From positions 124,001 through 188,000 of the IMG/VR virus record IMGVR_UViG_3300031951_000003: a stretch of 64,000 nt of DNA; one strand, given 5' to 3'. The position numbers and the translations under genes were made by a program. Below the pieces are notes generated by a model that was not told the origin of the DNA, searched no databases, and saw only the letters and a list, made by a program, of their open reading frames with translations. Shown here in pieces: positions 1,370-22,729 of this stretch (position 1 is the stretch's first letter; each line of letters starts with the position of its first letter).

Positions 1370-1413
1370 ATCGTATAAATAGACTTTTAATTTGGAAATT
1401 TAATATTTATGTA

Positions 1414-1436
1414 TATCTTTGTTGTGTTCTTTGAAA
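1414..1436 (+). promoter_or_regulatory. Bacteroidota-type -7 promoter (TATCTTTG) and boxA-like GTTCTTTGAAA upstream of tmRNA
   Basis: Matches TAnnTTTG; the same boxA-like word precedes tRNA-Glu at 13458-13468. Confidence 0.6.
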
Positions 1437-1441
1437 ATATT

Positions 1442-5000: not shown

Positions 5001-5335
5001 CTTCTTTCCTTCCTTGGTTACACAGATTTGACCTTTCAGTGGCTCAAGATGTGTTCATAAAAATCAAAGGAAAAAGAAACACTTTCCAAATCAGAGCTGA
5101 CATCCTTAACTTCGGAAACATGGTTAATAACAAGTGGGGTGTTTCTCAAAGAGCGGCAGTTCCTCAGTTGTTAAACTTTGTAAGTAGAGACGCGAACAAT
5201 GTTCCTTCTTACAGACTTTCAACTCAAATTCTTGATGGACAAACAGTATTGGCAAAACAAACTTACCAATTCAACTCATCAGTATTTGACGTATGGAGTG
5301 CACAGTTAGGTATTAGATATACTTTCGGTAAGTAA
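2060..5335 (+). CDS. TonB-dependent outer-membrane receptor (Oar-like; carboxypeptidase-regulatory N-domain, plug, beta-barrel)
   Basis: Signal peptide; LSGVV..E.LVGATV N-domain; NNFTIDG and GAGINAVTRSGTN plug motifs; C-terminal QLGIRYTF. Confidence 0.92.
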   Translation: MKKAILMSLLTLFVTITSFGQITTSSLSGVVKNEKGETLVGATVHAVHQPTGSEYRATTNKTGVYSIPAVRVGGPYLIHVSYVGYRKAELTDINTLLGVTSNVDVTLISESKELKEVTIVGTRNNLFSKDKTGAAQQFGRRELTTIPITGARTIDGITKYNPFGDGRSFGAQDSRLNNFTIDGSQFNNNFGLGSSAAAGGRTGASAISLDAIDQLQVNVAPFDIRQSGFVGAGINAVTRSGTNEIEGSVYQTQRNNSKTYVGDNARGTTVTAQKFDEKVFGFRLGAPIIKNKLFIFGNYESIVRTEPGTTWISTGSPLTGSQVSRVKYDDMVRLSKFMRDTLGYETGPFEGYSNTNDSRKFMTRLDWNISPKHKLMARFVNHNSSAEINISNSQSAGAGNRTTQFNAMSFQNSGYIIMDNTRSGVLELNSKFSNTLHNNLIISYDKQIEDRAYMSQMFPTIDIREGSATYTSVGFDPFTPGNKLNYWTFNVTNNVTKYLEKHTLVGGFNYQMYQSNNLFFPASNGVYIFNSLNDFYTAAKQSVANNGGPSAFAPARFQFRYSALPGAVEPMQVLEANRLDLYVQDEYNLTKNLKLTTGLRANVISLGNTALENPAITSMTFGGGEKLNTSVMPKTQLLFEPRFGFNYDLKGEKKTQIRGGTGIFTGRPPFVFLSNQIGNNGVLTGFIDVSGAQASQYGFTTNPNQYFIPQTPTLPSTFDLAFTDANYKFPQVWRSNLAIDQKLPWLGLVASAEVLYNKTINAVHYYNANQDVPVGTLGGPDKRALFANTDPGVRVNDNVSMAAVLTNKQGAYNKSLTLKLEKPISKGVWGYAAWTTSRAEDYMSAGSIASGSWQSARSINGNNDLQLSTSDFVVRNRIVGLLGYRFDYGKKYGGATTITIGYVGAQNNPFSYTVAGDLNGDRVRDNELMFVPVNGSDIRFSTLTVGTRTYTEAEQQAAFESFISQDDYLSTRRGQYAERNASFLPWLHRFDLSVAQDVFIKIKGKRNTFQIRADILNFGNMVNNKWGVSQRAAVPQLLNFVSRDANNVPSYRLSTQILDGQTVLAKQTYQFNSSVFDVWSAQLGIRYTFGK

Positions 5336-10888: not shown

Positions 10889-10989
10889 TTTCTTTTTGTT
10901 TTTTTTGTTAATGTTTTAATAACGTCTTGAGTTTATAAATATAGAAAAGTTTTTCAGAATCGTCAATTAGCAGTGTAAACTTTTTTTTG

Positions 10990-11074
10990 CGGAGAGTATT
11001 GGATTCGAACCAATAGGCCAATTGCTCGACCACAGTTTAGCAAACTGCTCCTTTAACCACTCAGGCAACTCTCC
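10990..11074 (-). tRNA. tRNA-Ser(GCT)
   Basis: Cloverleaf with long variable arm; anticodon loop TTGCTAA. Confidence 0.93.
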
Positions 11075-11078
11075 TTTG

Positions 11079-11152
11079 TGTGAACGATGGGGTTCGAACC
11101 CACGACAACTAGCGCCACAAGCTAGTGCTCTTCCAACTGAGCTACGTTCACC
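11079..11152 (-). tRNA. tRNA-His(GTG)
   Basis: Cloverleaf; loop TTGTGGC; encoded G-1. Confidence 0.92.
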
Positions 11153-11164
11153 ATATTACTTACG

Positions 11165-11237
11165 AGGTCTTACTAGGATTCGAACCCAAATTTCTTCGTC
11201 CGTAGCGAAGTGTATTCATCCATTATACGATAAGACC
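11165..11237 (-). tRNA. tRNA-Arg(ACG)
   Basis: Cloverleaf; loop CTACGGA. Confidence 0.9.
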
Positions 11238-11320
11238 TATCTGTTATTTTCTTCTAAACATTTCGGACAAAGTCCGTCTTTGTCTAAAAGTGTTCCGTGA
11301 ATTCCACAAATATTATTCAT
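11237..11320 (-). CDS. 27-aa zinc-finger microprotein within the tRNA array
   Basis: MNNICGIHGTLLDKDGLCPKCLEENNR; CxxH...CxxC. Confidence 0.55.
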   Translation of the reverse strand: MNNICGIHGTLLDKDGLCPKCLEENNR

Positions 11321-11332
11321 AATAAAAATTTG

Positions 11333-11403
11333 TTATCCCCCAAGGATTCGAACCTTGAATAATTGGACCAAAACCAATTGTGTTACCGTTACACCAGAGG
11401 ATA
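11333..11403 (-). tRNA. tRNA-Gln(TTG)
   Basis: Cloverleaf; loop TTTTGGT. Confidence 0.9.
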
Positions 11404-11408
11404 TAATG

Positions 11409-11482
11409 TGGACCCTCACGGACTTGAACCGTGGACCTACTGATTATGAGTCAGCCGCTCTAACCAACTGAGCTAAGGGTCC
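11409..11482 (-). tRNA. tRNA with CAT anticodon, most likely Ile2 (lysidine type)
   Basis: GGACCCTTAGCTCAG...GACTCATAATC resembles Ile2 rather than initiator Met. Confidence 0.85.
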
Positions 11483-11549
11483 TTAAATGATTGTTACACT
11501 TGGTTGTGTTACTTCCTCCTGACACCACTCAGGACTTCAATCATTTTTG

Positions 11550-11631
11550 TGGGAGTAGCTGGACTCGAACCAACGAACTCGAAAGAGGGAAGATTTACAG
11601 TCTTCTGCCATTGCCACTAGGCGATACTCCC
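11550..11631 (-). tRNA. tRNA-Tyr(GTA)
   Basis: Cloverleaf with variable arm; loop CTGTAAA. Confidence 0.93.
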
Positions 11632-11635
11632 ATTA

Positions 11636-11768
11636 AGGAAAGGAGAAGATGGTTGCGTGGACATCTCCTTTTACGATTGGCATTACTCAGGTGTATTTCT
11701 CCCAACTCCGATGATACAGACCGAAATACACTCTCGAGTCATTAGTATCACCATTCCCCAATCAACCT
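11636..11768 (-). ncRNA. Candidate pseudoknotted ncRNA between tRNA-Trp and tRNA-Tyr
   Basis: Nested GATTGG/CCAATC, ACTC/GAGT, GTGTATTTC/GAAATACAC; second hairpin AAAGGAG-ATG/CAT-CTCCTTT; crossing pairs GGTGATAC/GTATCATC and GGTTG/CAACC. Confidence 0.6.
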
Positions 11769-11773
11769 ATTTG

Positions 11774-11846
11774 CACGCACGGTAGGACTCGAACCTACAA
11801 CACCTAGTTTTGGAGACTAGTACTCTACCAATTGAGCTACGCACGC
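11774..11846 (-). tRNA. tRNA-Trp(CCA)
   Basis: Cloverleaf; loop CTCCAAA. Confidence 0.92.
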
Positions 11847-11851
11847 GTGAC

Positions 11852-12400
11852 TTATTTTTTCGTCCATTTACTTTTAGAGAGTAAGTCATCCCAATCTTCA
11901 TATCCTTGTTCACGAGCATACTCATCGTTTTTTTTCCGAGTATATTCTTTCACTTTATCGGGGTCTCTCATTTCATCGGAATCTTTGAAACCTAATGATT
12001 TCGCACATTCCTCTTCACACCAGTTGTGAGAACCTATCTCTATGTTTATTGGTAAGTCAGTTTCCAAGGATTCGATAAAATCTTCGAATTGACTTGCCGA
12101 TTCATAAGGCATTGTGTAGATTCCTTCATGAACCTGATATCCACTTTCATTTTTACTGTCGAAAACCTCGATTCTACCCATTCTGTATTTTTCACCCATG
12201 AGTGAAAATACACCATATCCCACAGTTGAATAACTGAATCTACCACGAGTGCTTACACCTAACATATCAACACATCTTGGATTTGCCTCCATGTAATGCG
12301 CTAAGTGGTCAACAAGCATCTCATCACTTAGTTCTTTTCCTTCTTGTTTTCTTCGGATGTTATTCAGGAACCATAACAAATCCGCTCTATTGATTTTCAT
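11852..12400 (-). CDS. Hypothetical protein
   Basis: 182-aa ORF; TATCTTTG upstream (12416-12423). Confidence 0.7.
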   Translation of the reverse strand: MKINRADLLWFLNNIRRKQEGKELSDEMLVDHLAHYMEANPRCVDMLGVSTRGRFSYSTVGYGVFSLMGEKYRMGRIEVFDSKNESGYQVHEGIYTMPYESASQFEDFIESLETDLPINIEIGSHNWCEEECAKSLGFKDSDEMRDPDKVKEYTRKKNDEYAREQGYEDWDDLLSKSKWTKK

Positions 12401-12428
12401 AATTTTTTATTTATACAAAGATAACGAA

Positions 12429-12953
12429 TTATCTCTCAAGTTTTTTTATACATTCATCTATTTTATCTCTTAATCTACCACCATACCCGAAGTCACCATC
12501 TACCTGAACGTGTCTCCACATCGGAACTCTTGGTTTCATCCATTTATATTGACCATCAAGTTTCATGTCGTCGATTGAAATCCAATTTGAGATTTTATTA
12601 TCTTTTACCCACTTTGTGATTTCTGCTGCTCTTTCCCACTCAATTGAAGGTCTACTAAGTTTATTCCAAAGGTCCTGATGGGTTGTGATATCTACAATCG
12701 GAGCTGTTACACCATAGTATTGGAAAATACGTTTTAATTGTATAAAACTGAAATGTTTTCTCCAATCCGAACTCACAACTAAACTTGCGTTTGTTTCATC
12801 ACAAATTTTTTGAAGTGCTTGACAATCATCTTCAACCCATGGGTAAGGGATTGTAAAAGTTTTACTGTGTTCGTTCAGCGTAACTCTCCCATCACCCCAA
12901 GTTCCCCATGCCAGTGGTCCATCTACATCAATAAAAATAATTTTACGTCTCAT
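12429..12953 (-). CDS. HAD-domain protein of the Swiss-army-knife RNA-repair type (HAD_SAK_2-like)
   Basis: IIFIDVDGPL, VVSSDWR, WISIDD motifs. Confidence 0.75.
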   Translation of the reverse strand: MRRKIIFIDVDGPLAWGTWGDGRVTLNEHSKTFTIPYPWVEDDCQALQKICDETNASLVVSSDWRKHFSFIQLKRIFQYYGVTAPIVDITTHQDLWNKLSRPSIEWERAAEITKWVKDNKISNWISIDDMKLDGQYKWMKPRVPMWRHVQVDGDFGYGGRLRDKIDECIKKLER

Positions 12954-12967
12954 AACAATTTTATTTG

Positions 12968-13041
12968 TTGGAATGGGCGGATTCGAACCGCCGACATCTA
13001 ACGTATCAGATTAGCACTCTAACCAACTGAGTTACATTCCA
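12968..13041 (-). tRNA. tRNA-Ile(GAT)
   Basis: Cloverleaf; loop CTGATAC. Confidence 0.92.
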
Positions 13042-13047
13042 TTATTG

Positions 13048-13119
13048 AGGTCAGGATAGGAATCGAACCTACGTAGAAAGTTTTGCAGACTTCCGCCTAA
13101 GCCACTCGGCCACCCGACC
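13048..13119 (-). tRNA. tRNA-Cys(GCA)
   Basis: Cloverleaf; loop CTGCAAA; U73. Confidence 0.93.
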
Positions 13120-13126
13120 TTAATTG

Positions 13127-13198
13127 TGACCCCTGATGGATTCGAACCATCGACTTCTTCATTAAAAGTGAAGAGCTCTTCCACTGAGCTAAGAGGTC
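13127..13198 (-). tRNA. tRNA-Lys(TTT)
   Basis: Cloverleaf; loop CTTTTAA. Confidence 0.92.
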
Positions 13199-13202
13199 TT
13201 TG

Positions 13203-13275
13203 TGGTAACGGTCAGAATCGAACTGACCACACCTTGGTCTTCAGCCAAGTGCTCTACCAACTGAGCTACGTCACC
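13203..13275 (-). tRNA. tRNA-Phe(GAA)
   Basis: Cloverleaf; loop CTGAAGA. Confidence 0.92.
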
Positions 13276-13280
13276 ATTTG

Positions 13281-13353
13281 TAGTCCCTGTAGGAATCGAA
13301 CCTACGACACCTTGCATGTAAGGCAAGTGCTCTTCCAACTGAGCTAAGAGACT
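13281..13353 (-). tRNA. tRNA-Val(TAC)
   Basis: Cloverleaf; loop CTTACAT. Confidence 0.93.
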
Positions 13354-13360
13354 GAATTTG

Positions 13361-13432
13361 TAGCCCCGCACGGACTCGAACCGAAATCTCCACCGTGAAA
13401 GGGTGGCGTCCTAACCTTTAGACGACGGGGCC
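13361..13432 (-). tRNA. tRNA-Glu(TTC)
   Basis: Cloverleaf; loop CTTTCAC. Confidence 0.92.
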
Positions 13433-13457
13433 AAGAATTACAAACTTACAACCATTA

Positions 13458-13468
13458 TTTCAAAGAAC
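13458..13468 (-). promoter_or_regulatory. boxA-like antitermination element GTTCTTTGAAA
   Basis: Same word upstream of tmRNA; resembles rrn boxA. Confidence 0.5.
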
Positions 13469-13483
13469 CAAAAACTCCTTAAA

Positions 13484-13522
13484 TAAAAAAACCCCGAACT
13501 TCATTTCTGTAGTCCGAGGTTT
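13484..13522 (-). terminator. Attenuator terminator upstream of Glu..Ser tRNA block
   Basis: AAACCTCGGACT/AGTTCGGGGTTT + T run; 5' arm GGACTACAG can pair instead with CTGTAGTCT in the leader ORF. Confidence 0.85.
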
Positions 13523-13555
13523 GTATATATAACTCTTCAGGAATTATAGGCTATC

Positions 13556-13636
13556 TCATGAGACTACAGCGCGTGTCTTAAACCAACAAATCTCTTGTTG
13601 TTTACTATAGACTTTATTACGCACTATTGTTCTCAT
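13556..13636 (-). CDS. Leader peptide 1, MRTIVRNKVYSKQQEICWFKTRAVVS
   Basis: Follows TATATTTG (13654-13661); 3' end carries the antiterminator strand; codons match the downstream tRNAs. Confidence 0.75.
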   Translation of the reverse strand: MRTIVRNKVYSKQQEICWFKTRAVVS

Positions 13637-13695
13637 TATTATTATAATTACTACAAATATAGTAAATCTCTTTTAAAAATCAAATTATTTTTCTG

Positions 13696-13776
13696 TACCC
13701 CAAGAGAGACTCGAACTCTCACGACCGAAGTCATTGGTTCCTAAGACCAACGCGGCTACCATTACGCCATCGGGGT
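13696..13776 (-). tRNA. tRNA-Leu(TAG)
   Basis: Cloverleaf with variable arm; loop CTTAGGA. Confidence 0.92.
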
Positions 13777-13779
13777 ATT

Positions 13780-13995
13780 TTAGTGAGTTCCGTTTGTTAG
13801 AGAAACTCCGTGTTCAAACCCTTTTATGAAATCATTTATTTCTTCTTGGGTCATACTATTATAAACTCTCCCAACAACAAATCCAATTTCATTACCTAAA
13901 TCAGAAATATCGCCGATATAATTAATTTCTTTTTTGTGGTTATCAAATTCATTTAGAATTTTTTCCAAGATTGTATATGTAAACGCTCTAGTCAT
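13780..13995 (-). CDS. Hypothetical protein
   Basis: Start moved to MTRAFTY to avoid overlap with tRNA-Arg. Confidence 0.55.
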   Translation of the reverse strand: MTRAFTYTILEKILNEFDNHKKEINYIGDISDLGNEIGFVVGRVYNSMTQEEINDFIKGFEHGVSLTNGTH

Positions 13996-14007
13996 TTTTT
14001 TAAGTTG

Positions 14008-14079
14008 TAGTCCCGCCAAGAATCGAACTTGGAATTACTGCTTAGAAGGCAGTAGTTATATCCATTTAACTACAGGACC
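14008..14079 (-). tRNA. tRNA-Arg(TCT)
   Basis: Cloverleaf; loop CTTCTAA. Confidence 0.92.
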
Positions 14080-14083
14080 AAAG

Positions 14084-14170
14084 TACCTCAGGTGGGACTT
14101 GAACCCACACGGACATTTTCTGTCCACAAGATTTTAAGTCTTGCGCGTATACCGATTTCGCCACCAAGGT
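14084..14170 (-). tRNA. tRNA-Leu(TAA)
   Basis: Cloverleaf with variable arm; loop CTTAAAA. Confidence 0.93.
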
Positions 14171-14212
14171 ATAAAACAAAAGTAAGGAATCAGTATTGAA
14201 AAAACAAATGAA

Positions 14213-14917
14213 TTAGAACTTTTCTTCCCAAACAGTATCTCTTTCTGTTTCTTCAATATTCATTGTGTGATTTAAGGTTATCTCTTTACGGTCCAAATCA
14301 ATTTCGAAATTACCTTGAGAACCTTCGTTGATTTCCCATCCACCAAAATTATTTTCAAGCATTCTGTATGCGTAGTCTGAAACCACCGCAGGAACAGAAT
14401 CACCATTTGTAAAATCGTCTTCCAAGTAACCAGAGTCACCACTTCCATTGTAGTCAAGTTGAAGGACTCTATCACTAATTTCCTCGTCGTTTTCTAACGT
14501 ATCAAAAAGCTCCATTAAATCCTCATTGTCGTCTTCTTCCAAAGAATGAGTAATAGATTCGGTATTCCCAACATCATAGTAGCTATAGTCATAGGAGATT
14601 GAAATTTCTCTAGTTTTACAATCAATCTCAATCATAACTCTTCCCCAATTGATATCGTCATATTCGGGTTGTTTAATTAGTTCATTTTCACAAACATAAT
14701 AAATGCTTTTCTGAAAAATTGGAATTAATCCTTCAGGAATTTCCGCAACGTAATTATTTGAAAAATGTGTTACATTTTTCCAATCGATATCGTCACAATC
14801 AAAATAAGAGGTATTCATTTCGAATTCGACAAATGCATCTTCCATTCCGATGGAACCTAAATAACGACAGATACGATTTAAATACTTTTTTTCGTCTTTA
14901 GTTAATAAATCTTTCAT
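14213..14917 (-). CDS. DUF6878-like protein
   Basis: YNGSGDSG...GWEINEGSQG C-terminal motif. Confidence 0.6.
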   Translation of the reverse strand: MKDLLTKDEKKYLNRICRYLGSIGMEDAFVEFEMNTSYFDCDDIDWKNVTHFSNNYVAEIPEGLIPIFQKSIYYVCENELIKQPEYDDINWGRVMIEIDCKTREISISYDYSYYDVGNTESITHSLEEDDNEDLMELFDTLENDEEISDRVLQLDYNGSGDSGYLEDDFTNGDSVPAVVSDYAYRMLENNFGGWEINEGSQGNFEIDLDRKEITLNHTMNIEETERDTVWEEKF

Positions 14918-14930
14918 GATAATATAAATA

Positions 14931-15284
14931 TCAATCTTCGAACTCTAATTTTATTGTTTTCAACATCCAAGATGGCCTTGTGTTCGATACCATGTTGTTT
15001 ATCCATTCTTTTGCGGAAGGGATATAATTATTACAATCTTCCTTTACGTGTTGTTCACCAACATATCGGGTGTAGACTGTCTTACCATCACTGTTTTTGA
15101 ATTCAGGACCAAACCTCTTTTCCATTTCGAAAATCCCTTCCGAATGATGTCTAAACATTCTGTGTAAAGAATCCCCGAACCAACCTTTGGTCTCATCCAT
15201 CCACTCATGTAAATGAATATAATCCTCAGGTTTTCCACCAAACTTTTTAGCGGAACTTTTTGCATGTAAATTAGGGTGTGACAT
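14931..15284 (-). CDS. DUF6915-like protein
   Basis: MSHPNLHAKSSAKKFGGKPEDY..H.WMDETK..HRMFRHHSEGIF..EQHVKED; start reassigned. Confidence 0.7.
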   Translation of the reverse strand: MSHPNLHAKSSAKKFGGKPEDYIHLHEWMDETKGWFGDSLHRMFRHHSEGIFEMEKRFGPEFKNSDGKTVYTRYVGEQHVKEDCNNYIPSAKEWINNMVSNTRPSWMLKTIKLEFED

Positions 15285-15870
15285 TTCTCCAAGATTCTTT
15301 TCGATAACCAAATAAATGAAATTGCTCCTCAAAAATTTTATAAACGTAGTTGGATACTTCTTCATCATAAAATTCCTTCCATGGTTTCCTTTTTTCATTC
15401 ATTTGTCCTTCAAATTCTGTTTTGAATTTGTTATTACTTATGAACTCATCAAAGGTTTTCTTGATATCGGAATTCTCCAAATCCAAAAATTTCAAAGACT
15501 TGAGGTCATTCTCCAAATTTTCCTGTTTTATGAATTTATCAAATGGTCTACCCAAAATTTCATAATTTTTATGATATTGTAATTGATAATCATTAATTAT
15601 TTTCGGGTTTTCGAGGGATTCGAAAACCCAAGTTTTGAAATGTTTTTGAAAATCATTCAAATGATGTGAATACAAATAAAACAGGGATACTAGTCTAGAG
15701 TAAGGGTTTCTAACGTTTGATACGAAGAAATAGTCTTTTTTGTTGGAATCAAATGTAAAATGATGGTCAAAAGTTTGAAAACCCATAACACGAAGAAGTT
15801 CTTTAGTTGAACGTGTTCCTGTTCTTTGTGGGGTAAACCAATAAACTTTGTGTTTCTCTGAGATATGCAT
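15271..15870 (-). CDS. Sulfotransferase family 2-like protein
   Basis: PQRTGTRS and VRNPYSRLVS motifs; paralog of 7533-8153. Confidence 0.75.
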   Translation of the reverse strand: MHISEKHKVYWFTPQRTGTRSTKELLRVMGFQTFDHHFTFDSNKKDYFFVSNVRNPYSRLVSLFYLYSHHLNDFQKHFKTWVFESLENPKIINDYQLQYHKNYEILGRPFDKFIKQENLENDLKSLKFLDLENSDIKKTFDEFISNNKFKTEFEGQMNEKRKPWKEFYDEEVSNYVYKIFEEQFHLFGYRKESWRNVTP

Positions 15871-16103
15871 TAGTAAATTTTTGTGTTGTTTCTTCTTGCC
15901 TCTTCCGCTTCCTTATAGATACGTATCCAAGTTAGAGTAATATCAACAGGTGCTAACACCCAACACATGATAATCAAACCTAAAGTATCTAATCCAGGTG
16001 AGATACCAAGACCACCTGCCATAACATCTCTGTTCCATTTTCTTACTGACATGACAAGACAATAAGCCAAACAGATTAAATAATAAGACCAAAAAATTTC
16101 CAT
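15870..16103 (-). CDS. Small membrane protein
   Basis: Two hydrophobic segments; abuts the next gene. Confidence 0.55.
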   Translation of the reverse strand: MEIFWSYYLICLAYCLVMSVRKWNRDVMAGGLGISPGLDTLGLIIMCWVLAPVDITLTWIRIYKEAEEARRNNTKIY

Positions 16104-16119
16104 AACTTTCAAATTTTAG

Positions 16120-16192
16120 TGGAGAATGAGGGAGTCGAACCCACGACAACTTGAATGCAAATCAAGTGCTCTACCAACTGAGCTAATTCCCC
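16120..16192 (-). tRNA. tRNA-Ala(TGC)
   Basis: G3.U70; loop TTTGCAT. Confidence 0.93.
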
Positions 16193-16198
16193 TATTTG

Positions 16199-16271
16199 AG
16201 CCTCCTGTCGGAATCGAACCAACGACCTACTGATTACAAATCAGTTGCTCTACCTGCTGAGCTAAGGAGGC
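16199..16271 (-). tRNA. tRNA-Thr(TGT)
   Basis: Cloverleaf; loop TTTGTAA. Confidence 0.93.
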
Positions 16272-16277
16272 GATGTG

Positions 16278-16350
16278 AGCGGAAGACCAGGCTCGAACTG
16301 GCCACCCCGACCTTGGCAAGGTCGTGCTCTACCGAATGAGCTACTTCCGC
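16278..16350 (-). tRNA. tRNA-Gly(GCC)
   Basis: Cloverleaf; loop TTGCCAA. Confidence 0.94.
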
Positions 16351-16359
16351 AATTTTCTG

Positions 16360-16432
16360 AGCGGGAGACCAGGCTCGAACTGGCCACCTATAGCTTGGAA
16401 GGCTATCGCTCTACCAAATGAGCTACTCCCGC
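16360..16432 (-). tRNA. tRNA-Gly(TCC)
   Basis: Cloverleaf; loop CTTCCAA. Confidence 0.94.
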
Positions 16433-16436
16433 ATAT

Positions 16437-16538
16437 TCCGTTTTTCCTTCACATTTAGCCCAATCACCAGTGAAACAATGATTGGATTTTGGATGGAGAA
16501 GTCTGCAAGGATTTCTCCCATTAGACCGTTACCACGGA
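16437..16538 (-). ncRNA. Candidate structured RNA between tRNA-Asp and tRNA-Gly
   Basis: Closing TCCGT/ACGGA; internal GGAGAA/TTCTCC and CCAATCA/TGATTGG. Confidence 0.4.
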
Positions 16539-16551
16539 CAAACTCTACCAG

Positions 16552-16625
16552 CGGAACGGACGGGGCTCGAACCCGCGACCTCTTGCGTGACAGGCAAGCA
16601 TTCTAGCCAACTGAACTACCGCTCC
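16552..16625 (-). tRNA. tRNA-Asp(GTC)
   Basis: Cloverleaf; loop CTGTCAC. Confidence 0.94.
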
Positions 16626-16630
16626 ATTTG

Positions 16631-16817
16631 AACAGGTTTTTTGTGTCCTTTTACACATCATGACCAACATATTACTACATTGGTGGTTACATTTTCGTCT
16701 TTGGTTAATTACTCCTGACTTATAGTAAACACTACCCTCACCGCTCTGATACCGCGAATCAAGACGGCGTCTTTGGGATTCATATACCGTGGGGTTCCAC
16801 CACAGTCTTCACCTGTT
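16631..16817 (-). ncRNA. Candidate ~190-nt multi-stem ncRNA between tRNA-Asn and tRNA-Asp
   Basis: Ends pair AACAGGT/ACCTGTT; stems CTGTGG/CCACGG, CGTCTT/AAGACG, CCAA/TTGG, TGTGT/ACACA. Confidence 0.5.
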
Positions 16818-16820
16818 TTG

Positions 16821-16892
16821 CGTCCTCTCATGGGCTCGAACCATGGACCCTCTCGTTAACAGCGAGATGCTCTACCGCTGAGCTAAGAAGAC
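16821..16892 (-). tRNA. tRNA-Asn(GTT)
   Basis: Cloverleaf; loop CTGTTAA. Confidence 0.93.
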
Positions 16893-16898
16893 GTTTTG

Positions 16899-16972
16899 TT
16901 GGGAAGACAGGATTCGAACCTGCGGCCCCCTGGTCCCAAACCAGGTGCTCTACCGGGCTGAGCCACTTCCCA
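16899..16972 (-). tRNA. tRNA-Pro(TGG)
   Basis: Cloverleaf; loop TTTGGGA. Confidence 0.93.
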
Positions 16973-16989
16973 TTATTAAACAAAGGTAA

Positions 16990-17023
16990 TAAAAAAACCC
17001 CGAACTTTCAAGATTCAGGGTTT
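16990..17023 (-). terminator. Attenuator terminator upstream of Pro..Leu tRNA block
   Basis: AAACCCTGAAT/GTTCGGGGTTT + T run; CTGAATCT can pair instead with AGATTCAG in the leader ORF. Confidence 0.85.
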
Positions 17024-17045
17024 TAATGTTTGGCTTTGTTTTTTA

Positions 17046-17147
17046 TTATCCTACATCTGTATCTGAATCTAAGCATAGATTACCCCCATCACCATTAGGT
17101 GTTGTAGGTCTGAACACTAAATTCGTATTAACAAAAAGTTGTTTCAT
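17046..17147 (-). CDS. Leader peptide 2, MKQLFVNTNLVFRPTTPNGDGGNLCLDSDTDVG
   Basis: TATTTAT upstream; contains the antiterminator strand; rich in N/T/G/D/L/P and AGA-Arg matching the downstream tRNAs. Confidence 0.72.
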   Translation of the reverse strand: MKQLFVNTNLVFRPTTPNGDGGNLCLDSDTDVG

Positions 17148-17169
17148 ATTCTAATAAATACAAAGGATT

Positions 17170-19464: not shown

Positions 19465-21135
19465 ATGAGGGTATTAGGATTTTCTGTCGGACACGACAAA
19501 GGTGCTGTTATTGTTGAAAATGGAAAAGTCTTGATTGGAATTACTCAAGAAAGAATTTCAAGAATCAAACATGATGGAGCACATCAAGGTGGATTAATTC
19601 CTGCCGAATCTATAAGATATTGTCTTGAAAATTCAGGATATACTTTTAGAGATATCGATTTATTTGTCTACAGCACAACTGAAATTGTTGATGACGTTCA
19701 AAAAAAGTTTATCGAAGAATTTCAGTTTGACCCTACGGGTAAATTCGAGTTTTTACCTCATCATTTGGCCCACGCATATTCTTCTTTTTTTAGTTCAGGA
19801 TTCGATGATGCCGTTGTGGTTGTTGCAGACGCATCGGGTAGTATTTTGAATGAAAAAAATAAATTACCTGAGTGGTATCCGAAAGTTAGTAGGAAAGGTC
19901 TCAATCACGAAGAAGATTGGACAGAAGCAATTTCAATTTATCATTTTAATAAAAATGATTACAAAGAGGTTTATAAGAAATGGATAAAATATCCTGTTCC
20001 GATTGATACTAACGAAGATGTTTCTGTCGGAACCGTTTACTCTGAAGGTTCACTTCAATTAATTTATGAACCCAATACCAATTCTTGGCCTGCAGGTAAA
20101 CTGATGGGACTTGCGTCATATGCTGACAAGGACATAGTCGAGGAAGCTCCACATTATATTGTTGAAACAGAAGATGGAGATATTTTCATTCCAAATAATA
20201 GAATATATCCCAAAGTGACATATGATTCAGATTTTTTCTCAAGAGCTTGTGTTGCTGGAATATATCAAAGGGAACAAGAAAGGGTATCTCTAATGTTAGC
20301 GAAGAAAGCAAAGGAATTGACCGATTCTGAAAATATTTGCGTGGCAGGTGGGTCTTTCCTTAATTGTAATTCTAACGAAAAAATCCTCAACTCAGGATTG
20401 TTTGAGGGTTGTTACTTCATACCTCCCTCTGACGATAGTGGAATCCCTTTAGGGTGCGCCTGGTATGGTTATCAACTTATGAGTCCGATTGAAAAAAATA
20501 ATTTTCTTTCTCCTTACATAGGTAAAAATTATTCTAACAATGATATTGTTTCAGCAATAAACCAATACCCAAATTTATATCATGAAAGATTTGATGATTT
20601 TGACGAACTTGTTGATAAAGTCTCACATTGGTTAACTCAAAATAGGGTCATAGGCTGGTTTCAAGACCAATCTGAAATTGGACCTAGAGCTCTTGGTAAT
20701 CGTTCAATCTTAGCATCACCTATCAACAAATGGATGACAGGTCACATTAATTCAGACATCAAAAAAAGAGAATGGTATAGACCGTTTGCACCCGCCGTGT
20801 TATTTGAACACCAAAGTGAAATTTTTGATTCTAATGTTTTTTCTCCATATATGTTGGTTACGACTAACGTAAAAGAATCTTGGAGAGATAAAATACCTGC
20901 AGTAACTCACATTGACGGTTCCGCTAGACATCAATCGGTTTCAGAAAAATCTAATTATAAATTTTATAAATTAATCGAGAGTTTTTATAACAAAACAGGA
21001 GTTCCAGTTTTACTCAACACGAGTTTCAATGGCCCTCATGAACCAATTGTTGAAACTCCAAAGAATGCAATTGACACCATGTTAAGTTGTAAACTCGATT
21101 ACTTAGTAATAGGAAATTATTTAATCAAAAGATAG
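19465..21135 (+). CDS. Carbamoyltransferase (NodU/CmcH family)
   Basis: HD..A, ERISRIKH, HHLAHA, GKLMGLASY, GPRALGNRSILA, RPFAP, LLNTSFN..EPIVE. Confidence 0.93.
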   Translation: MRVLGFSVGHDKGAVIVENGKVLIGITQERISRIKHDGAHQGGLIPAESIRYCLENSGYTFRDIDLFVYSTTEIVDDVQKKFIEEFQFDPTGKFEFLPHHLAHAYSSFFSSGFDDAVVVVADASGSILNEKNKLPEWYPKVSRKGLNHEEDWTEAISIYHFNKNDYKEVYKKWIKYPVPIDTNEDVSVGTVYSEGSLQLIYEPNTNSWPAGKLMGLASYADKDIVEEAPHYIVETEDGDIFIPNNRIYPKVTYDSDFFSRACVAGIYQREQERVSLMLAKKAKELTDSENICVAGGSFLNCNSNEKILNSGLFEGCYFIPPSDDSGIPLGCAWYGYQLMSPIEKNNFLSPYIGKNYSNNDIVSAINQYPNLYHERFDDFDELVDKVSHWLTQNRVIGWFQDQSEIGPRALGNRSILASPINKWMTGHINSDIKKREWYRPFAPAVLFEHQSEIFDSNVFSPYMLVTTNVKESWRDKIPAVTHIDGSARHQSVSEKSNYKFYKLIESFYNKTGVPVLLNTSFNGPHEPIVETPKNAIDTMLSCKLDYLVIGNYLIKR

Positions 21136-21136
21136 T

Positions 21137-22729
21137 ATGAGCACGATTTATGGTTTTTTTGGTGGTTCTCATAGTCCATCCGCGTGTTTAATTAGAAATG
21201 GAAAGATTGTATCATGTATAGAAGAAGAAAGATTAACCAGAATTAAGGCTGGTGACAACTTCGACAGTTTTCCAGAATTATCCTCAGAAGAAATTCAAAA
21301 ATACACAGGTCTTAATGTTCACGATGCTGATTATAGGGTTTTTGTTGAGCCGGTAATCGATGCGTTCGCAAAAAAATTGACCAAGGATAATTTTGAGAGA
21401 GTTGGTCATCACGATGCTCATTGCTATGGTTCTTATTTTACAAGTGGTATGGATGGAAAAGTTTTAAGTATTTCATACGACGGTGGAGGAGACAAAACCG
21501 TAATGAAAGTCTACCTTTGTGAAGATGGTAAAATGAATTTGGCATATTCTTATGATTTTGCAACAACGGGAAGTATACCTCATCTTTGGGCATTCAGTGT
21601 GACCTCAATTAGAGGATATAACGAGAATGGAGAGAGCATTTGGAAAATGTGTAAAGACGAAGGGAAACTTATGGGAATGGCACCTGATGGGTTTTACGAT
21701 GAGAGGATATATAAAATTCTGAATTCAATAATCGATTACAAAGACTTCAAATTTTTCCCATCGAATACGGGTGCGAAAGCTAGATTTGTTGTAGACACAA
21801 TGTTCAGGAAAGGTTATTTCGACTCACAAGAGAAACTTCAGGTTTTTTCGTTTAACTTACAAAAATTAACTGAAGACCTTTTCCTTAATTTTTTAGACGA
21901 CCTTCACACTAGATTTCCCGATTATAAAAAATTATGTTTTTCTGGTGGTTTGTTTGCCAACGTAAAATTAAATCAAAAAATTAATCAACTACCTTGGGTT
22001 GAGGAAATATATATTGTTCCACCTATGGGAGACGAAGGGTTAAGCTTAGGTGCATGTATAAAGAAAGCAGTAGACTTGGGTGAAATCACAAAACCATTCA
22101 AATTGGATAATGTTTTTTTTGGTAAAGAGTATGATGATGACCAAATTTCATTGATTAGTCAAAAATATAATTTTGAGAAAAAGATATATAACCCTTCTGA
22201 AATCGCTAAGAATATTGATGAGGGTGAAATTATCGGTTGGTTTCAACACGGATTTGAATTTGGTCCACGAGCCTTGGGTGGTAGAAGTATTCTTATGAGA
22301 CCAACAAGCTCAGACACTCATAGTAAATTAAACAAAAGGTTGAAAAGACATGATTCGATGCCATTTGCACCTATTGTAATGTCAGAATATTTTGATGAAA
22401 TTTTCTTTGAAACAAAGTCAAAATACTCCGCAGAATTTATGACTATTTGTTATCAAACTAAAGAGAATTGGATTGAAAAAATACCTGCGGTAATCCAAAA
22501 ATCAGATAAGACTGCGAGACCTCAGATTGTAAAAAGAGAGAAGAACTACAAATTTTGGGAAATACTTGATGAATACTATAAAATTTCAAATATACCTGTT
22601 TTGTTAAATACTTCTTTCAACACTCACAATGAACCAATTGTAGATAACCCCGAACAAGCCTTTTCTAAATTACAAGATAAAACTTTAGATAAATTAGTTA
22701 TTGGAAATTATGTTTACACAAATAGGTGA
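21137..22729 (+). CDS. Carbamoyltransferase (NodU/CmcH family), second copy
   Basis: EEERLTRIK, HHDAH, DGGGD, EGKLMGMA, GPRALGGRS, LLNTSFN. Confidence 0.93.
   Translation: MSTIYGFFGGSHSPSACLIRNGKIVSCIEEERLTRIKAGDNFDSFPELSSEEIQKYTGLNVHDADYRVFVEPVIDAFAKKLTKDNFERVGHHDAHCYGSYFTSGMDGKVLSISYDGGGDKTVMKVYLCEDGKMNLAYSYDFATTGSIPHLWAFSVTSIRGYNENGESIWKMCKDEGKLMGMAPDGFYDERIYKILNSIIDYKDFKFFPSNTGAKARFVVDTMFRKGYFDSQEKLQVFSFNLQKLTEDLFLNFLDDLHTRFPDYKKLCFSGGLFANVKLNQKINQLPWVEEIYIVPPMGDEGLSLGACIKKAVDLGEITKPFKLDNVFFGKEYDDDQISLISQKYNFEKKIYNPSEIAKNIDEGEIIGWFQHGFEFGPRALGGRSILMRPTSSDTHSKLNKRLKRHDSMPFAPIVMSEYFDEIFFETKSKYSAEFMTICYQTKENWIEKIPAVIQKSDKTARPQIVKREKNYKFWEILDEYYKISNIPVLLNTSFNTHNEPIVDNPEQAFSKLQDKTLDKLVIGNYVYTNR

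What the first reader, a model, noticed from the sequence alone, without database searches (positions are those of the whole stretch)
13484..13661. Attenuator 1: KVYSKQQEICWFK sensor run with 1:2 / 2:3 / 3:4 pairings
Seen (minus strand): TATATTTG, then a 26-aa ORF (13556-13636), a terminator (13484-13522), a boxA-like element and tRNA-Glu. Codons 8-20 are 13 consecutive codons read by block tRNAs, and the leader covers 12 of the 13 block tRNAs (all but His). CUGUAGUCU (13561-13569) can pair over 9 bp with GGACUACAG (13507-13515) in the terminator 5' arm and loop. It can alternatively pair locally with AGACAC just upstream. No TAnnTTTG is visible between the terminator and tRNA-Glu, so these tRNAs should depend on readthrough. 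Inference: a ribosome stalled in the run masks segment 1 and frees the antiterminator.
Basis: partly seen in the sequence, partly recalled or inferred. Interest (0 to 1): 0.9.

Follow-up and report, generated by a model that had tools for sequence, protein, structure and literature searches.

The report
Leader-peptide attenuator before phage tRNA genes
A tiny translated ORF whose codons sample almost every tRNA encoded just downstream is joined to a terminator/antiterminator RNA switch. This probably lets a giant Bacteroidota phage raise transcription of its own tRNA genes when those tRNAs run short, a form of control I could not find described for tRNA genes.

Summary
The features are real: a promoter, a 26-codon ORF (13636..13556, minus strand), a 9-bp terminator with a U-run, a 9-bp alternative helix and a boxA-like motif, all upstream of 13 tRNA genes. 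A good TTTG-N20-TAAGTTTG promoter-like site lies between the terminator and tRNA-Glu.

The attenuator reading is strongly supported by comparison. A second unit sits before tRNA-Pro (17147..16991). More than 40 related viral contigs carry such units in at least six leader types. Each type is enriched, in frame only, for codons read by its own downstream tRNAs. One example is a Leu/Arg-rich leader before a Leu-Arg-Leu block.

Within the Glu type, leader codons track gain and loss of tRNA genes (permutation P=0.0003). The antiterminator helix shows compensatory changes, some at positions that are unpaired in the terminator. In folds with a ribosome mask, a stall in the sensor codons frees the antiterminator, and a ribosome at the ORF end blocks it.

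The boxA-like motif matches the rRNA-spacer boxA of Bacteroidota.

It is a new variant of ribosome-mediated attenuation, applied to tRNA arrays. Nothing is shown experimentally, and the role of the second promoter is open.

The parts
13654..13684 (-). P1: Bacteroidota-type promoter-like site. It has -33 TTTG (13684-13681), a 19-nt spacer and -7 TATATTTG (13661-13654), 17 nt before the leader AUG.
   Evidence: The same two-part motif precedes many ORF starts in the window. A TATATTTA/G box is conserved before the leader AUG in relatives.
13556..13636 (-). Leader ORF of unit 1: 26 codons plus UGA. Sensor codons 8-20 (13615-13577) read KVYSKQQEICWFK.
   Evidence: The ATG is invariant. The ORF stays open (26-33 codons) in all 35 unique curated units (both frame-control figures are from 23 of them): no in-frame stops against 45 and 64 in the other two frames. 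The fraction decodable by the own block is 0.57 in frame and 0.23 off frame.
13619..13636 (-). Segment 1: ORF start including the AUG. It pairs with segment 2 when no ribosome is present (anti-antiterminator).
   Evidence: MFE of the RNA truncated before the 3' arm.: -20.4 kcal/mol, z -4.7, 0 of 300 shuffles. In 21 of 35 units the pairing beats 95% of shuffles.
13584..13600 (-). Hairpin CAACAA-GAGAU-UUGUUG inside the ORF (the Gln-Gln ... Cys-Trp codons). Possibly an RNA polymerase pause hairpin.
   Evidence: The stem is conserved while the loop varies (L186, L098, L114). Its function is inferred only.
13559..13574 (-). Segment 2: last codons of the ORF. The core CUGUAGUCU (13569-13561) is the 5' strand of the antiterminator.
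   Evidence: Covariation with segment 3 in alignment A2.
13528..13548 (-). Conserved hairpin UAAUUC-CUGAA-GAGUUA between the stop codon and the terminator. It lies inside the antiterminator loop. Its role is unknown.
   Evidence: CCUGAAGA is invariant in 14 Glu-type sequences (the next base varies in L062 and L186). The hairpin is absent in the L098/L114 subgroup.
13485..13519 (-). Intrinsic terminator: 5' arm 13519-13511 (segment 3 extends to 13507), loop, 3' arm 13500-13492 (segment 4), U-run 13491-13485.
   Evidence: full-length MFE -47.6 kcal/mol with 9 of 9 terminator pairs. In A2, 112 of 112 cells are paired. GTTCGGGGTTTTTT occurs only twice in the window, both times just before a tRNA block.
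13452..13469 (-). boxA-like element GGTTCTTTGAAATAATGG.
   Evidence: The related motif GTTCTTTGAMATATTGG (one base off the window's copy; exact in relatives) is found almost only in Bacteroidota genomes. 61 of 122 matches lie within 1 kb after the 16S 3' end, and in L207 it lies between the spacer tRNAs and 23S. The gamma-proteobacterial consensus is GYTCTTTAANA (PMC5725501). The motif also sits directly before the phage tmRNA (1426-1441).
13441..13472 (-). P2: promoter-like TTTG-N20-TAAGTTTG that ends 8 nt before tRNA-Glu.
   Evidence: It is conserved in relatives. 29 of 35 units have TAnnTTTG after the terminator. tRNA blocks without an attenuator also have TAnnTTTG 6-8 nt before the first tRNA.
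10989..13432 (-). Regulated block: tRNA Glu, Val, Phe, Lys, Cys, Ile, then two ORFs (174 aa and 182 aa), then tRNA Trp, Tyr, Met, Gln, Arg(acg), His, Ser(gct).
17046..17162 (-). Unit 2 leader: a -7-like box TGTATTTA (17162-17155) and a 33-codon ORF at 17147..17046, MKQLFVNTNLVFRPTTPNGDGGNLCLDSDTDVG. The antiterminator 5' strand AGAUUCAG is at 17070-17063.
   Evidence: It has a run of 12 codons decodable by Pro..Ala plus Leu, Arg, Leu (P=0.003). It is depleted for codons of the other block.
16981..17020 (-). Unit 2 terminator: 5' arm from 17020, antiterminator 3' strand CUGAAUCU at 17018-17011, 3' arm 17006-16998, U-run to 16991. It is followed by the P2-like TACCTTTG (16988-16981), 8 nt before tRNA-Pro.
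   Evidence: In A1 the terminator is paired in 48 of 48 cells and the antiterminator in 47 of 48, with 2 compensatory pairs.
13695..16972 (-). Block sampled by leader 2: tRNA Pro, Asn, Asp, Gly(tcc), Gly(gcc), Thr, Ala, then four ORFs, then Leu(taa), Arg(tct), one ORF, Leu(tag).

Best explanation
This is a ribosome-mediated (leader-peptide) transcription attenuator placed in front of a phage tRNA gene array. It is one of two in the window and belongs to a family found in related giant Bacteroidota phages.

Proposed mechanism:
1. Transcription starts at P1, or arrives from the tRNA genes upstream, and enters a 26-codon ORF. The middle of the ORF holds about one codon for nearly every tRNA encoded downstream.
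2. If all those aminoacyl-tRNAs are plentiful, the ribosome runs to the last codons and the stop and covers segment 2. The terminator (3:4) then forms and transcription ends at the U-run.
3. If any sampled tRNA is scarce, the ribosome stalls in codons 2-19. Segment 2 stays free and pairs with segment 3 as soon as segment 3 is made. The terminator cannot form, and the polymerase reads through.
4. The read-through transcript then contains a host-type boxA. This probably recruits the rRNA-type Nus antitermination complex, so the polymerase can traverse the whole 2.4-kb array, including two embedded ORFs.
5. With no ribosome at all, the ORF start (segment 1) pairs with segment 2 and termination is the default.

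The tRNAs that are made relieve the stall, so the loop is a supply-sensing feedback on the tRNA genes themselves. A promoter-like site (P2) next to the first tRNA probably gives a basal level. The attenuator would then add a regulated, boxA-carrying component rather than being the only source of transcripts.

Shown by sequence and comparison: all elements, the codon/tRNA match, the helix covariation and the identity of boxA. Inferred: translation of the ORF, stalling, termination and read-through in vivo, Nus recruitment and P2 activity.
For: Elements and chance tests.

Second unit with the same logic in the window.

Family: 61 related loci plus pattern scans give 35 unique curated units from over 40 units detected. 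Other terminators add more units.

Leader types follow the block:
- Glu type. L073/L082 has MRHIVFSKQQEICWY, which contains all 13 amino acids of its block.
- Pro type.
- Leu(taa)-Arg(tct)-Leu(tag) type, MRTTLLHTLLLDRQGLLRRLMP, using TTA, CTA, CTT and AGA codons (binomial P=3e-7).
- Asn-Lys type.
- The L196, L022/L032 and L135 types.

Own block against sibling block in the same genome: every leader whose locus shows more than its first downstream tRNA (17 of 18 tests) prefers its own block, P from 2e-8 to 0.07.

Fine-scale tracking inside 16 Glu-type units (mean codons in the leader with the tRNA gene present versus absent): Phe 1.22 vs 0.29; Ile 1.57 vs 0.50; Lys 2.40 vs 1.18; Arg(acg) 1.43 vs 0.56. 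UCN Ser codons are about three times commoner where Ser(tga) is in the block (2.0 vs 0.71). Block-permutation P=0.0003.

The signal is frame-specific: 0.57 in frame against 0.23 and 0.23 off frame (P=1e-5), and 0, 45 and 64 stops in the three frames.

RNA switch:
- Terminator paired in 112/112 and 48/48 cells.
- Antiterminator paired in 127/140 and 47/48 cells, against 39-53/140 for slid controls.
- 4 and 2 pairs show compensatory double changes, including columns that are unpaired or only wobble-paired in the terminator.
- Ribosome-mask folds: A-site at codons 2-11 or 18-19 gives 9 of 9 antiterminator pairs. Codon 21 onward or the stop gives 0. No ribosome gives 1:2 pairing and 0. The same trend holds across the family.
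- 1:2 helix z -4.7.

boxA is the Bacteroidota rrn spacer boxA type. It lies after the terminator, which is the logical order.
Against: - There are no expression data, and nothing about translation or termination has been measured.
- A conserved promoter-like site lies between the terminator and the first tRNA in 29 of 35 units. Read-through may therefore contribute little.
- At equilibrium the full-length RNA always prefers the terminator, so the switch must be kinetic, as in classical attenuators.
- In the mask model, stalls at codons 12-17 allow segment 1 to re-pair behind the ribosome.
- Each tRNA is sampled by only one or two codons, so the strength of a single stall is uncertain.
- The match is imperfect. 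His is not sampled in the window leader. Leaders keep Gln codons where tRNA-Gln is absent (L017, L019, L034). L025's leader matches its reduced block poorly (4 of 21).
- The Gln-Gln/Cys-Trp codons are also the stem of an RNA hairpin, so their conservation is not purely about the peptide.
- The permutation tests are not corrected for phylogeny.
Confidence: 0.75

Rival explanations
1. The ORF and terminator form a separate mini-gene or an insulator. The terminator only stops transcription coming from the upstream tRNA genes and P1. The array is expressed only from P2, and the codon match has no regulatory meaning.
For: A P2-like TAnnTTTG lies 6-14 nt before the first tRNA in most units, and also before tRNA blocks that have no leader.
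Against: This does not explain four things. Six leader types each match their own block in frame. Leader codons follow tRNA gain and loss. A helix that competes with the terminator is kept by compensatory changes. A boxA, which works as RNA, is conserved upstream of P2 in 14 units, and L193/L199 have boxA but no TAnnTTTG.
Confidence: 0.1
2. The attenuator is real, but its main output is not the amount of tRNA made from this block. It acts as a checkpoint that decides whether polymerases arriving from upstream tRNA blocks continue, and whether they are converted by boxA into Rho-resistant complexes. In this view it sets the polarity and timing of one long tRNA operon that P2 already drives.
For: There is no terminator between tRNA-Leu(tag) (13695) and the leader, so upstream transcription enters it. 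The order is terminator, then boxA. ORFs are embedded in the array.
Against: This is a refinement of the main explanation, and sequence cannot separate the two. P1 is conserved directly before the leader, which argues for a dedicated transcript.
Confidence: 0.1
3. This is an RNA-only element, such as a riboswitch, a T-box-like tRNA sensor or a small RNA. The ORF is incidental and not translated.
For: Parts of the ORF are conserved as RNA helices: the CAACAA/UUGUUG hairpin and segments 1 and 2.
Against: The ATG is invariant. All variants stay open in frame 0, while the other two frames hold 45 and 64 stops. The codon match is frame-specific. No T-box or other Rfam family is found, even at E up to 5. 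One specifier could not report 13 tRNAs.
Confidence: 0.04

Closest known systems
Classical leader-peptide attenuators of amino-acid operons (trp, his, leu, thr, pheA; the multivalent ilvGMEDA leader of E. coli and Salmonella) - from established knowledge
   Same: A short translated leader, four RNA segments with 1:2, 2:3 and 3:4 pairings, and an intrinsic terminator. The position of the stalled ribosome decides the outcome. ilv-type leaders also mix several amino acids.
   Different: The regulated genes are tRNA genes, not enzymes. The leader holds about one codon for each of up to 13 different tRNAs, rather than runs of one or three amino acids. The sensed molecules are the products of the regulated genes. 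The element is carried by a phage and is followed by boxA and a second promoter-like site. There is no sequence or Rfam membership (Thr_leader 20 bits against a gathering score of 55).
pheST (pheM leader) attenuator of E. coli - from established knowledge
   Same: Attenuation is applied to a component of the translation machinery, and a leader ORF senses the charged tRNA.
   Different: It regulates an aminoacyl-tRNA synthetase and senses a single amino acid. It does not regulate tRNA genes.
T-box riboswitches
   Same: They sense tRNA status and switch between a terminator and an antiterminator.
   Different: A T-box binds one uncharged tRNA directly, with no translation. It has a specifier loop and a T-box motif. 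None is detected here, and the signal here is reading-frame-specific.
rrn / lambda nut boxA-dependent processive antitermination (NusB-NusE; PMC5725501)
   Same: The motif GTTCTTTGA(A/C)AT matches the boxA consensus at 10 of 11 positions. It closely matches the motif in Bacteroidota 16S-23S spacers (identical in relatives; one base differs in the window). It precedes stable-RNA genes.
   Different: Here it lies downstream of a conditional terminator, in front of phage tRNA arrays and a phage tmRNA. Binding of Nus factors has not been tested.
Phage tRNA clusters such as that of T4, and the view of phage tRNAs as a counter to tRNA-targeting defences (PMC10264068, PMC12409363)
   Same: Arrays of phage tRNA genes are thought to secure translation when host tRNAs are unsuitable or destroyed.
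   Different: I found no description of a sensing or feedback element in front of such arrays.

Membership tests
Ribosome-mediated (leader-peptide) transcription attenuator | A short ORF with a start codon lies upstream of the regulated genes and is conserved as an ORF. | tested here: met
   ORF at 13636..13556. The ATG is invariant in A2. The ORF has 26-33 codons in 35 units. In-frame stops number 0, against 45 and 64 in the other frames.
Ribosome-mediated (leader-peptide) transcription attenuator | The leader is enriched in codons whose decoding reports the regulated pathway. | tested here: met
   A run of 13 codons with 0 of 14,775 control windows reaching it. Own block preferred over sibling block. 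Codons track tRNA gain and loss, P=0.0003. Counter-examples are L025 and the Gln codons kept without tRNA-Gln.
Ribosome-mediated (leader-peptide) transcription attenuator | An intrinsic terminator lies between the leader and the regulated genes. | tested here: met
   A 9-bp G+C-rich stem plus U7. 112/112 and 48/48 cells are paired.
Ribosome-mediated (leader-peptide) transcription attenuator | A mutually exclusive antiterminator helix uses the terminator 5' arm and is supported by covariation. | tested here: met
   127/140 and 47/48 cells are paired, with 4 and 2 compensatory pairs. Slid controls give 39-53/140.
Ribosome-mediated (leader-peptide) transcription attenuator | Geometry: a stall at the sensor codons leaves segment 2 free, and a ribosome at the ORF end masks it. 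| tested here: met
   Constraint folds. This is in silico only, and codons 12-17 are ambiguous in unit 1.
Ribosome-mediated (leader-peptide) transcription attenuator | An anti-antiterminator (1:2) gives termination when the leader is not translated. | tested here: met
   Unit 1: -20.4 kcal/mol, z -4.7. 21 of 35 units are significant. It is not present in window unit 2, where the antiterminator is the default.
Ribosome-mediated (leader-peptide) transcription attenuator | Downstream genes are expressed through the terminator, with no promoter in between. | tested here: inconclusive
   A promoter-like TTTG-N20-TAAGTTTG lies at 13472-13441 and in 29 of 35 units. Against this, boxA lies upstream of it, and two units have no such site. 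No transcription-start data exist.
Ribosome-mediated (leader-peptide) transcription attenuator | Read-through responds to charged-tRNA supply in vivo or in vitro. | not testable with these tools
   This needs reporter, Term-seq or coupled transcription-translation assays.
Curated Rfam leader families (Thr, His, Leu, Trp, Phe leaders and others) | A match at the family's gathering score. | tested here: not met
   The only match is Thr_leader at 20.3 bits (gathering score 55, E=1.6) on unit 2.
T-box riboswitch | Specifier loop, T-box sequence and stem I architecture (Rfam RF00230). | tested here: not met
   No match even at E up to 5.
boxA (Nus-factor) antitermination signal | A sequence matching the boxA consensus and the host rrn boxA, located in the transcript of stable-RNA genes. 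| tested here: met
   The motif is in the transcript only if transcription comes through the terminator in Glu-type units.
boxA (Nus-factor) antitermination signal | It binds NusB-NusE and makes the polymerase resistant to termination. | not testable with these tools

The most novel reading that the evidence does not exclude
Giant Bacteroidota phages run their tRNA arrays under closed-loop supply control. Each array, up to the next attenuator, is preceded by a 'codon panel' leader ORF that samples about one codon per encoded tRNA. A shortage of any one of them lifts termination. Shortage could come from a mismatch with host codon usage, from host shut-off, or from tRNA-cleaving defence systems. 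The polymerase then picks up a host-type boxA and transcribes the whole array. As tRNA genes are gained or lost, the leaders are re-written to match.
Probability: 0.6. Interest if true: 0.92.

Novelty: new variant of a known kind. Interest (0 to 1): 0.88.

Why it matters
tRNA genes in bacteria and phages are usually thought to be controlled at promoters (growth rate, stringent response) or simply co-expressed. If this attenuator works as proposed, it is an autoregulatory sensor in which the products of the genes, charged tRNAs, are measured by translation itself, many species at once.

It bears on the long-standing question of why phages carry tRNA arrays and when they use them. It predicts induction when host tRNAs are depleted, which links it to current work on tRNA-targeting defence (PMC10264068, PMC12409363).

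It shows that leader sequences co-evolve with gene content over short evolutionary distances. It offers a compact natural 'any-of-N tRNAs is limiting' sensor for synthetic biology. It also gives a sequence rule for finding more such units: a small ORF whose codons mirror the tRNAs downstream.

Tried and rejected
- A megablast of the tRNA region against GenBank phages found only isolated tRNA matches and no relatives.
- Rfam at gathering score and at E up to 5 found no leader, T-box or other family. One multi-locus Rfam call failed internally.
- Equilibrium folding of the full-length leader always gives the terminator, even with a ribosome mask. Folding therefore had to be done on RNA truncated before the 3' arm.
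- Whole-ORF binomial tests are weak for several Glu-type leaders (P 0.03-0.15). The first codons and the last codons are constrained by RNA segments 1 and 2, and big blocks have a high background.
- Swapping leaders and terminators between units did not discriminate well, because all units share GUUCRG-type arms. Alignment-based pair counts were used instead.
- A hammerhead-like reading of CUGAAGAG was considered and dropped, because there is no stem II and no Rfam hit.
- The idea that the boxA-like motif is a -33/-7 promoter element was weighed. Its spacing to TAAGTTTG (12 nt) is too short, and its identity with rrn spacer boxA favours boxA.
- I did not pass long dot-bracket strings to the count of structure pairs. 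Pair counts were computed in scripts on alignments A1 and A2.

Full report
WHAT IS THERE

On the minus strand the finding's interval holds, in order:
- a Bacteroidota-type promoter-like site, TTTG-N19-TATATTTG, at 13684-13654;
- a 26-codon ATG ORF at 13636..13556;
- a conserved small hairpin at 13548-13528;
- an intrinsic terminator with arms at 13519-13511 and 13500-13492 and U7 at 13491-13485;
- a boxA-like motif at 13469-13452;
- a second promoter-like site, TTTG-N20-TAAGTTTG, at 13472-13441;
- tRNA-Glu at 13432.

Twelve more tRNAs follow down to 10989, interrupted by two ORFs. The 9-bp complement between 13569-13561 and 13515-13507 is real.

IS IT MORE THAN CHANCE

Codons 8-20 all encode amino acids whose tRNAs are in the block. 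I allowed U34 tRNAs of four-codon boxes to read the whole box. Under that rule the run of 13 is reached by none of the 14,775 25-codon windows from the window's own long ORFs. The leader is also depleted in codons of the other tRNA block. With strict wobble the run is 11 and coverage is 11 of 13, with P about 1e-3. GTTCGGGGTTTTTT occurs exactly twice in 64 kb, each time just before a tRNA block.

A SECOND UNIT IN THE WINDOW

Before tRNA-Pro there is a 33-codon ORF at 17147..17046. Its centre reads RPTTPNGDGGNL. It uses GGU and GGG for the two Gly tRNAs, AGA for Arg(tct), and UUA and CUA for the two Leu tRNAs further down. Its terminator has the same 3' arm. Its codons for LDSD contain AGAUUCAG, the perfect complement of the terminator 5' arm and loop, CUGAAUCU.

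RELATIVES

The 174-aa protein inside the array retrieved 61 viral contigs at 30-100% identity, most at 55% or more. Several are 317-321 kb long. Pattern scans added more. No GenBank phage is close.

Terminator-plus-tRNA filtering and curation gave 35 unique units out of over 40 detected. A generic terminator scan added units with other hairpins. Leaders fall into types that follow the block:
- Glu type. In L073/L082 the stretch MRHIVFSKQQEICWY contains each of the 13 amino acids of its block.
- Subgroups whose block also has Ser(tga) carry a UCG codon beside AGU.
- L202 lacks Val, Lys and Ile tRNAs and has E, T and T at the corresponding positions.
- A Leu(taa)-Arg(tct)-Leu(tag) block in L114/L148/L183/L201 is preceded by MRTTLLHTLLLDRQGLLRRLMP (12 of 21 codons, background 0.11, P=3e-7).
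- L009 lacks tRNA-Asp, and its Pro-type leader lacks Asp.
- L032 differs from L022 by Thr to Ile where tRNA-Ile is present.

Quantitative tests:
- In genomes with two units, every leader whose locus shows more than its first downstream tRNA (17 of 18 tests) prefers codons of its own block to those of the sibling block (P from 2e-8 to 0.07).
- Among 16 Glu-type units, leader codon counts are higher when the matching tRNA gene is present. Shuffling blocks among leaders gives P=0.0003.
- The signal exists only in the ORF's frame: 0.57 against 0.23 and 0.23, with stops 0, 45 and 64.

Exceptions exist. Gln codons are kept without tRNA-Gln. His is not sampled in the window leader. L025's leader is a poor match to its reduced block.

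THE RNA SWITCH

In alignments A1 (Pro type, 6 sequences) and A2 (Glu type, 14 sequences) the terminator is paired in every cell. The antiterminator is paired in 47/48 and 127/140 cells, against 39-53/140 when the partner is slid. There are 2 and 4 pairs with changes on both sides. Several of these involve columns that are in the terminator loop or are tolerated there only through G-U pairs.

The full-length RNA prefers the terminator at equilibrium, as in classical attenuators, so the choice must be made during transcription. I therefore folded the RNA up to the base before the 3' arm:
- With no ribosome, the ORF start including the AUG pairs with segment 2 and the antiterminator is absent.
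- With a 28-nt ribosome mask and the A site at codons 2-11 or 18-19, all nine antiterminator pairs form.
- From codon 21 to the stop, none form.
- Codons 12-17 are ambiguous, because segment 1 can re-pair behind a lone ribosome.

Unit 2 has no 1:2 helix. Its antiterminator is the default and is blocked only by a ribosome at codon 24 or later. The same trends hold across the family. The 1:2 helix beats 95% of shuffles in 21 of 35 units, with z -4.7 here. This explains the conserved first codons (often Thr-Thr, ACU ACA, which mimics segment 3) and the conserved tails (such as CSSD and GSE, which encode segment 2).

WHAT LIES AFTER THE TERMINATOR

The motif GTTCTTTGA(A/C)ATATTGG is found almost only in Bacteroidota genomes. 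Half of the matches lie within 1 kb after the 16S 3' end. In a Pedobacter rrn contig it sits between the spacer tRNAs and 23S. It matches the boxA consensus GYTCTTTAANA at 10 of 11 positions (PMC5725501). It also directly precedes the phage tmRNA.

Placing boxA after the conditional terminator is the logical order: the decision is made first, and processivity is added afterwards.

TAnnTTTG follows in 29 of 35 units, usually 6-14 nt before the tRNA. The same motif and spacing occur before blocks that have no leader. A basal promoter P2 is therefore likely. In 14 units boxA is upstream of P2, so it is transcribed only by read-through. In 4 units P2 comes first. Two units have boxA only.

CONTEXT

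The window encodes a type IX secretion sorting-domain protein and a SusC-like barrel. This, the promoter type and boxA all point to a Bacteroidota host. Phage-like genes are present.

COMPARISON AND NOVELTY

The mechanism class, leader-peptide attenuation, is textbook knowledge. Four things differ here:
- the target is arrays of tRNA genes;
- the sensed molecules are the products of those genes;
- the leader is a many-codon 'panel' design;
- the coupling to boxA and the phage setting.

Four full-text searches returned no description of leader-peptide attenuation of tRNA genes. No Rfam family matches.

CAVEATS

All functional steps are inferred. P2 may carry most expression. The statistics are not corrected for phylogeny. 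Wobble assumptions matter for Val and Pro codons.

Noticed in passing
window 12429-12953 (minus): The 174-aa protein embedded in the tRNA array matches Pfam HAD_SAK_2, the HAD domain of 'Swiss Army Knife' RNA-repair proteins (E=9e-20). This suggests a tRNA repair function next to the tRNA genes.
   Followed up: partly
window 1391-1441 (plus), before tmRNA 1442-1835: The phage tmRNA has its own TTTG-N19-TATCTTTG promoter-like site, followed by the same boxA-like motif (1426-1441) that abuts the tmRNA 5' end.
   Followed up: partly
window 13528-13548 (minus): A hairpin with the invariant loop region CCUGAAGA lies between the leader stop and the terminator. It is conserved in 14 Glu-type units but absent in the L098/L114 subgroup. 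The loop resembles a terminator 5' arm. Its function is unknown.
   Followed up: partly
window 16626-16819 and 11632-11772 (minus): Two non-tRNA spacers inside the arrays are conserved in relatives. The 194-nt spacer folds into a closed multibranch structure (z -2.2). The 141-nt spacer does not stand out (z -0.85). Neither has an Rfam match. They may be unannotated structured RNAs.
   Followed up: partly
window 43239-45146 and 2060-5335 (plus): A protein with a type IX secretion C-terminal sorting domain and a SusC-like CarboxypepD_reg plus beta-barrel protein are encoded on a contig classed as viral.
   Followed up: no
window 19465-22729 (plus): Two adjacent carbamoyltransferase genes.
   Followed up: no
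L008:9492-9835 and L001 compared with the window: There are recent deletions. L008 lost tRNA-Glu and P2 but kept the leader and terminator. L001 lost tRNA-Phe, Lys and Arg(tct) while its leader is identical to the window's.
   Followed up: partly
L025:7687 onward: A leader (MKALTLHTLCSTPNQIWGSRDM) precedes a reduced block (Asn, Gly, Gln, Trp, Arg) and matches only 4 of 21 codons. This is either a counter-example or a decaying unit.
   Followed up: partly
L213 (780-bp contig of an Algoriphagus MAG): It carries a boxA motif 8 nt before a Leu(taa)-Pro-Met tRNA array of the phage type. It is probably phage DNA binned with a bacterial genome.
   Followed up: no
L041:9291-9709: Upstream of its Glu-Cys-Ile block, the terminator and P2 are kept but the leader ORF is gone. 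This looks like a degenerate unit.
   Followed up: no
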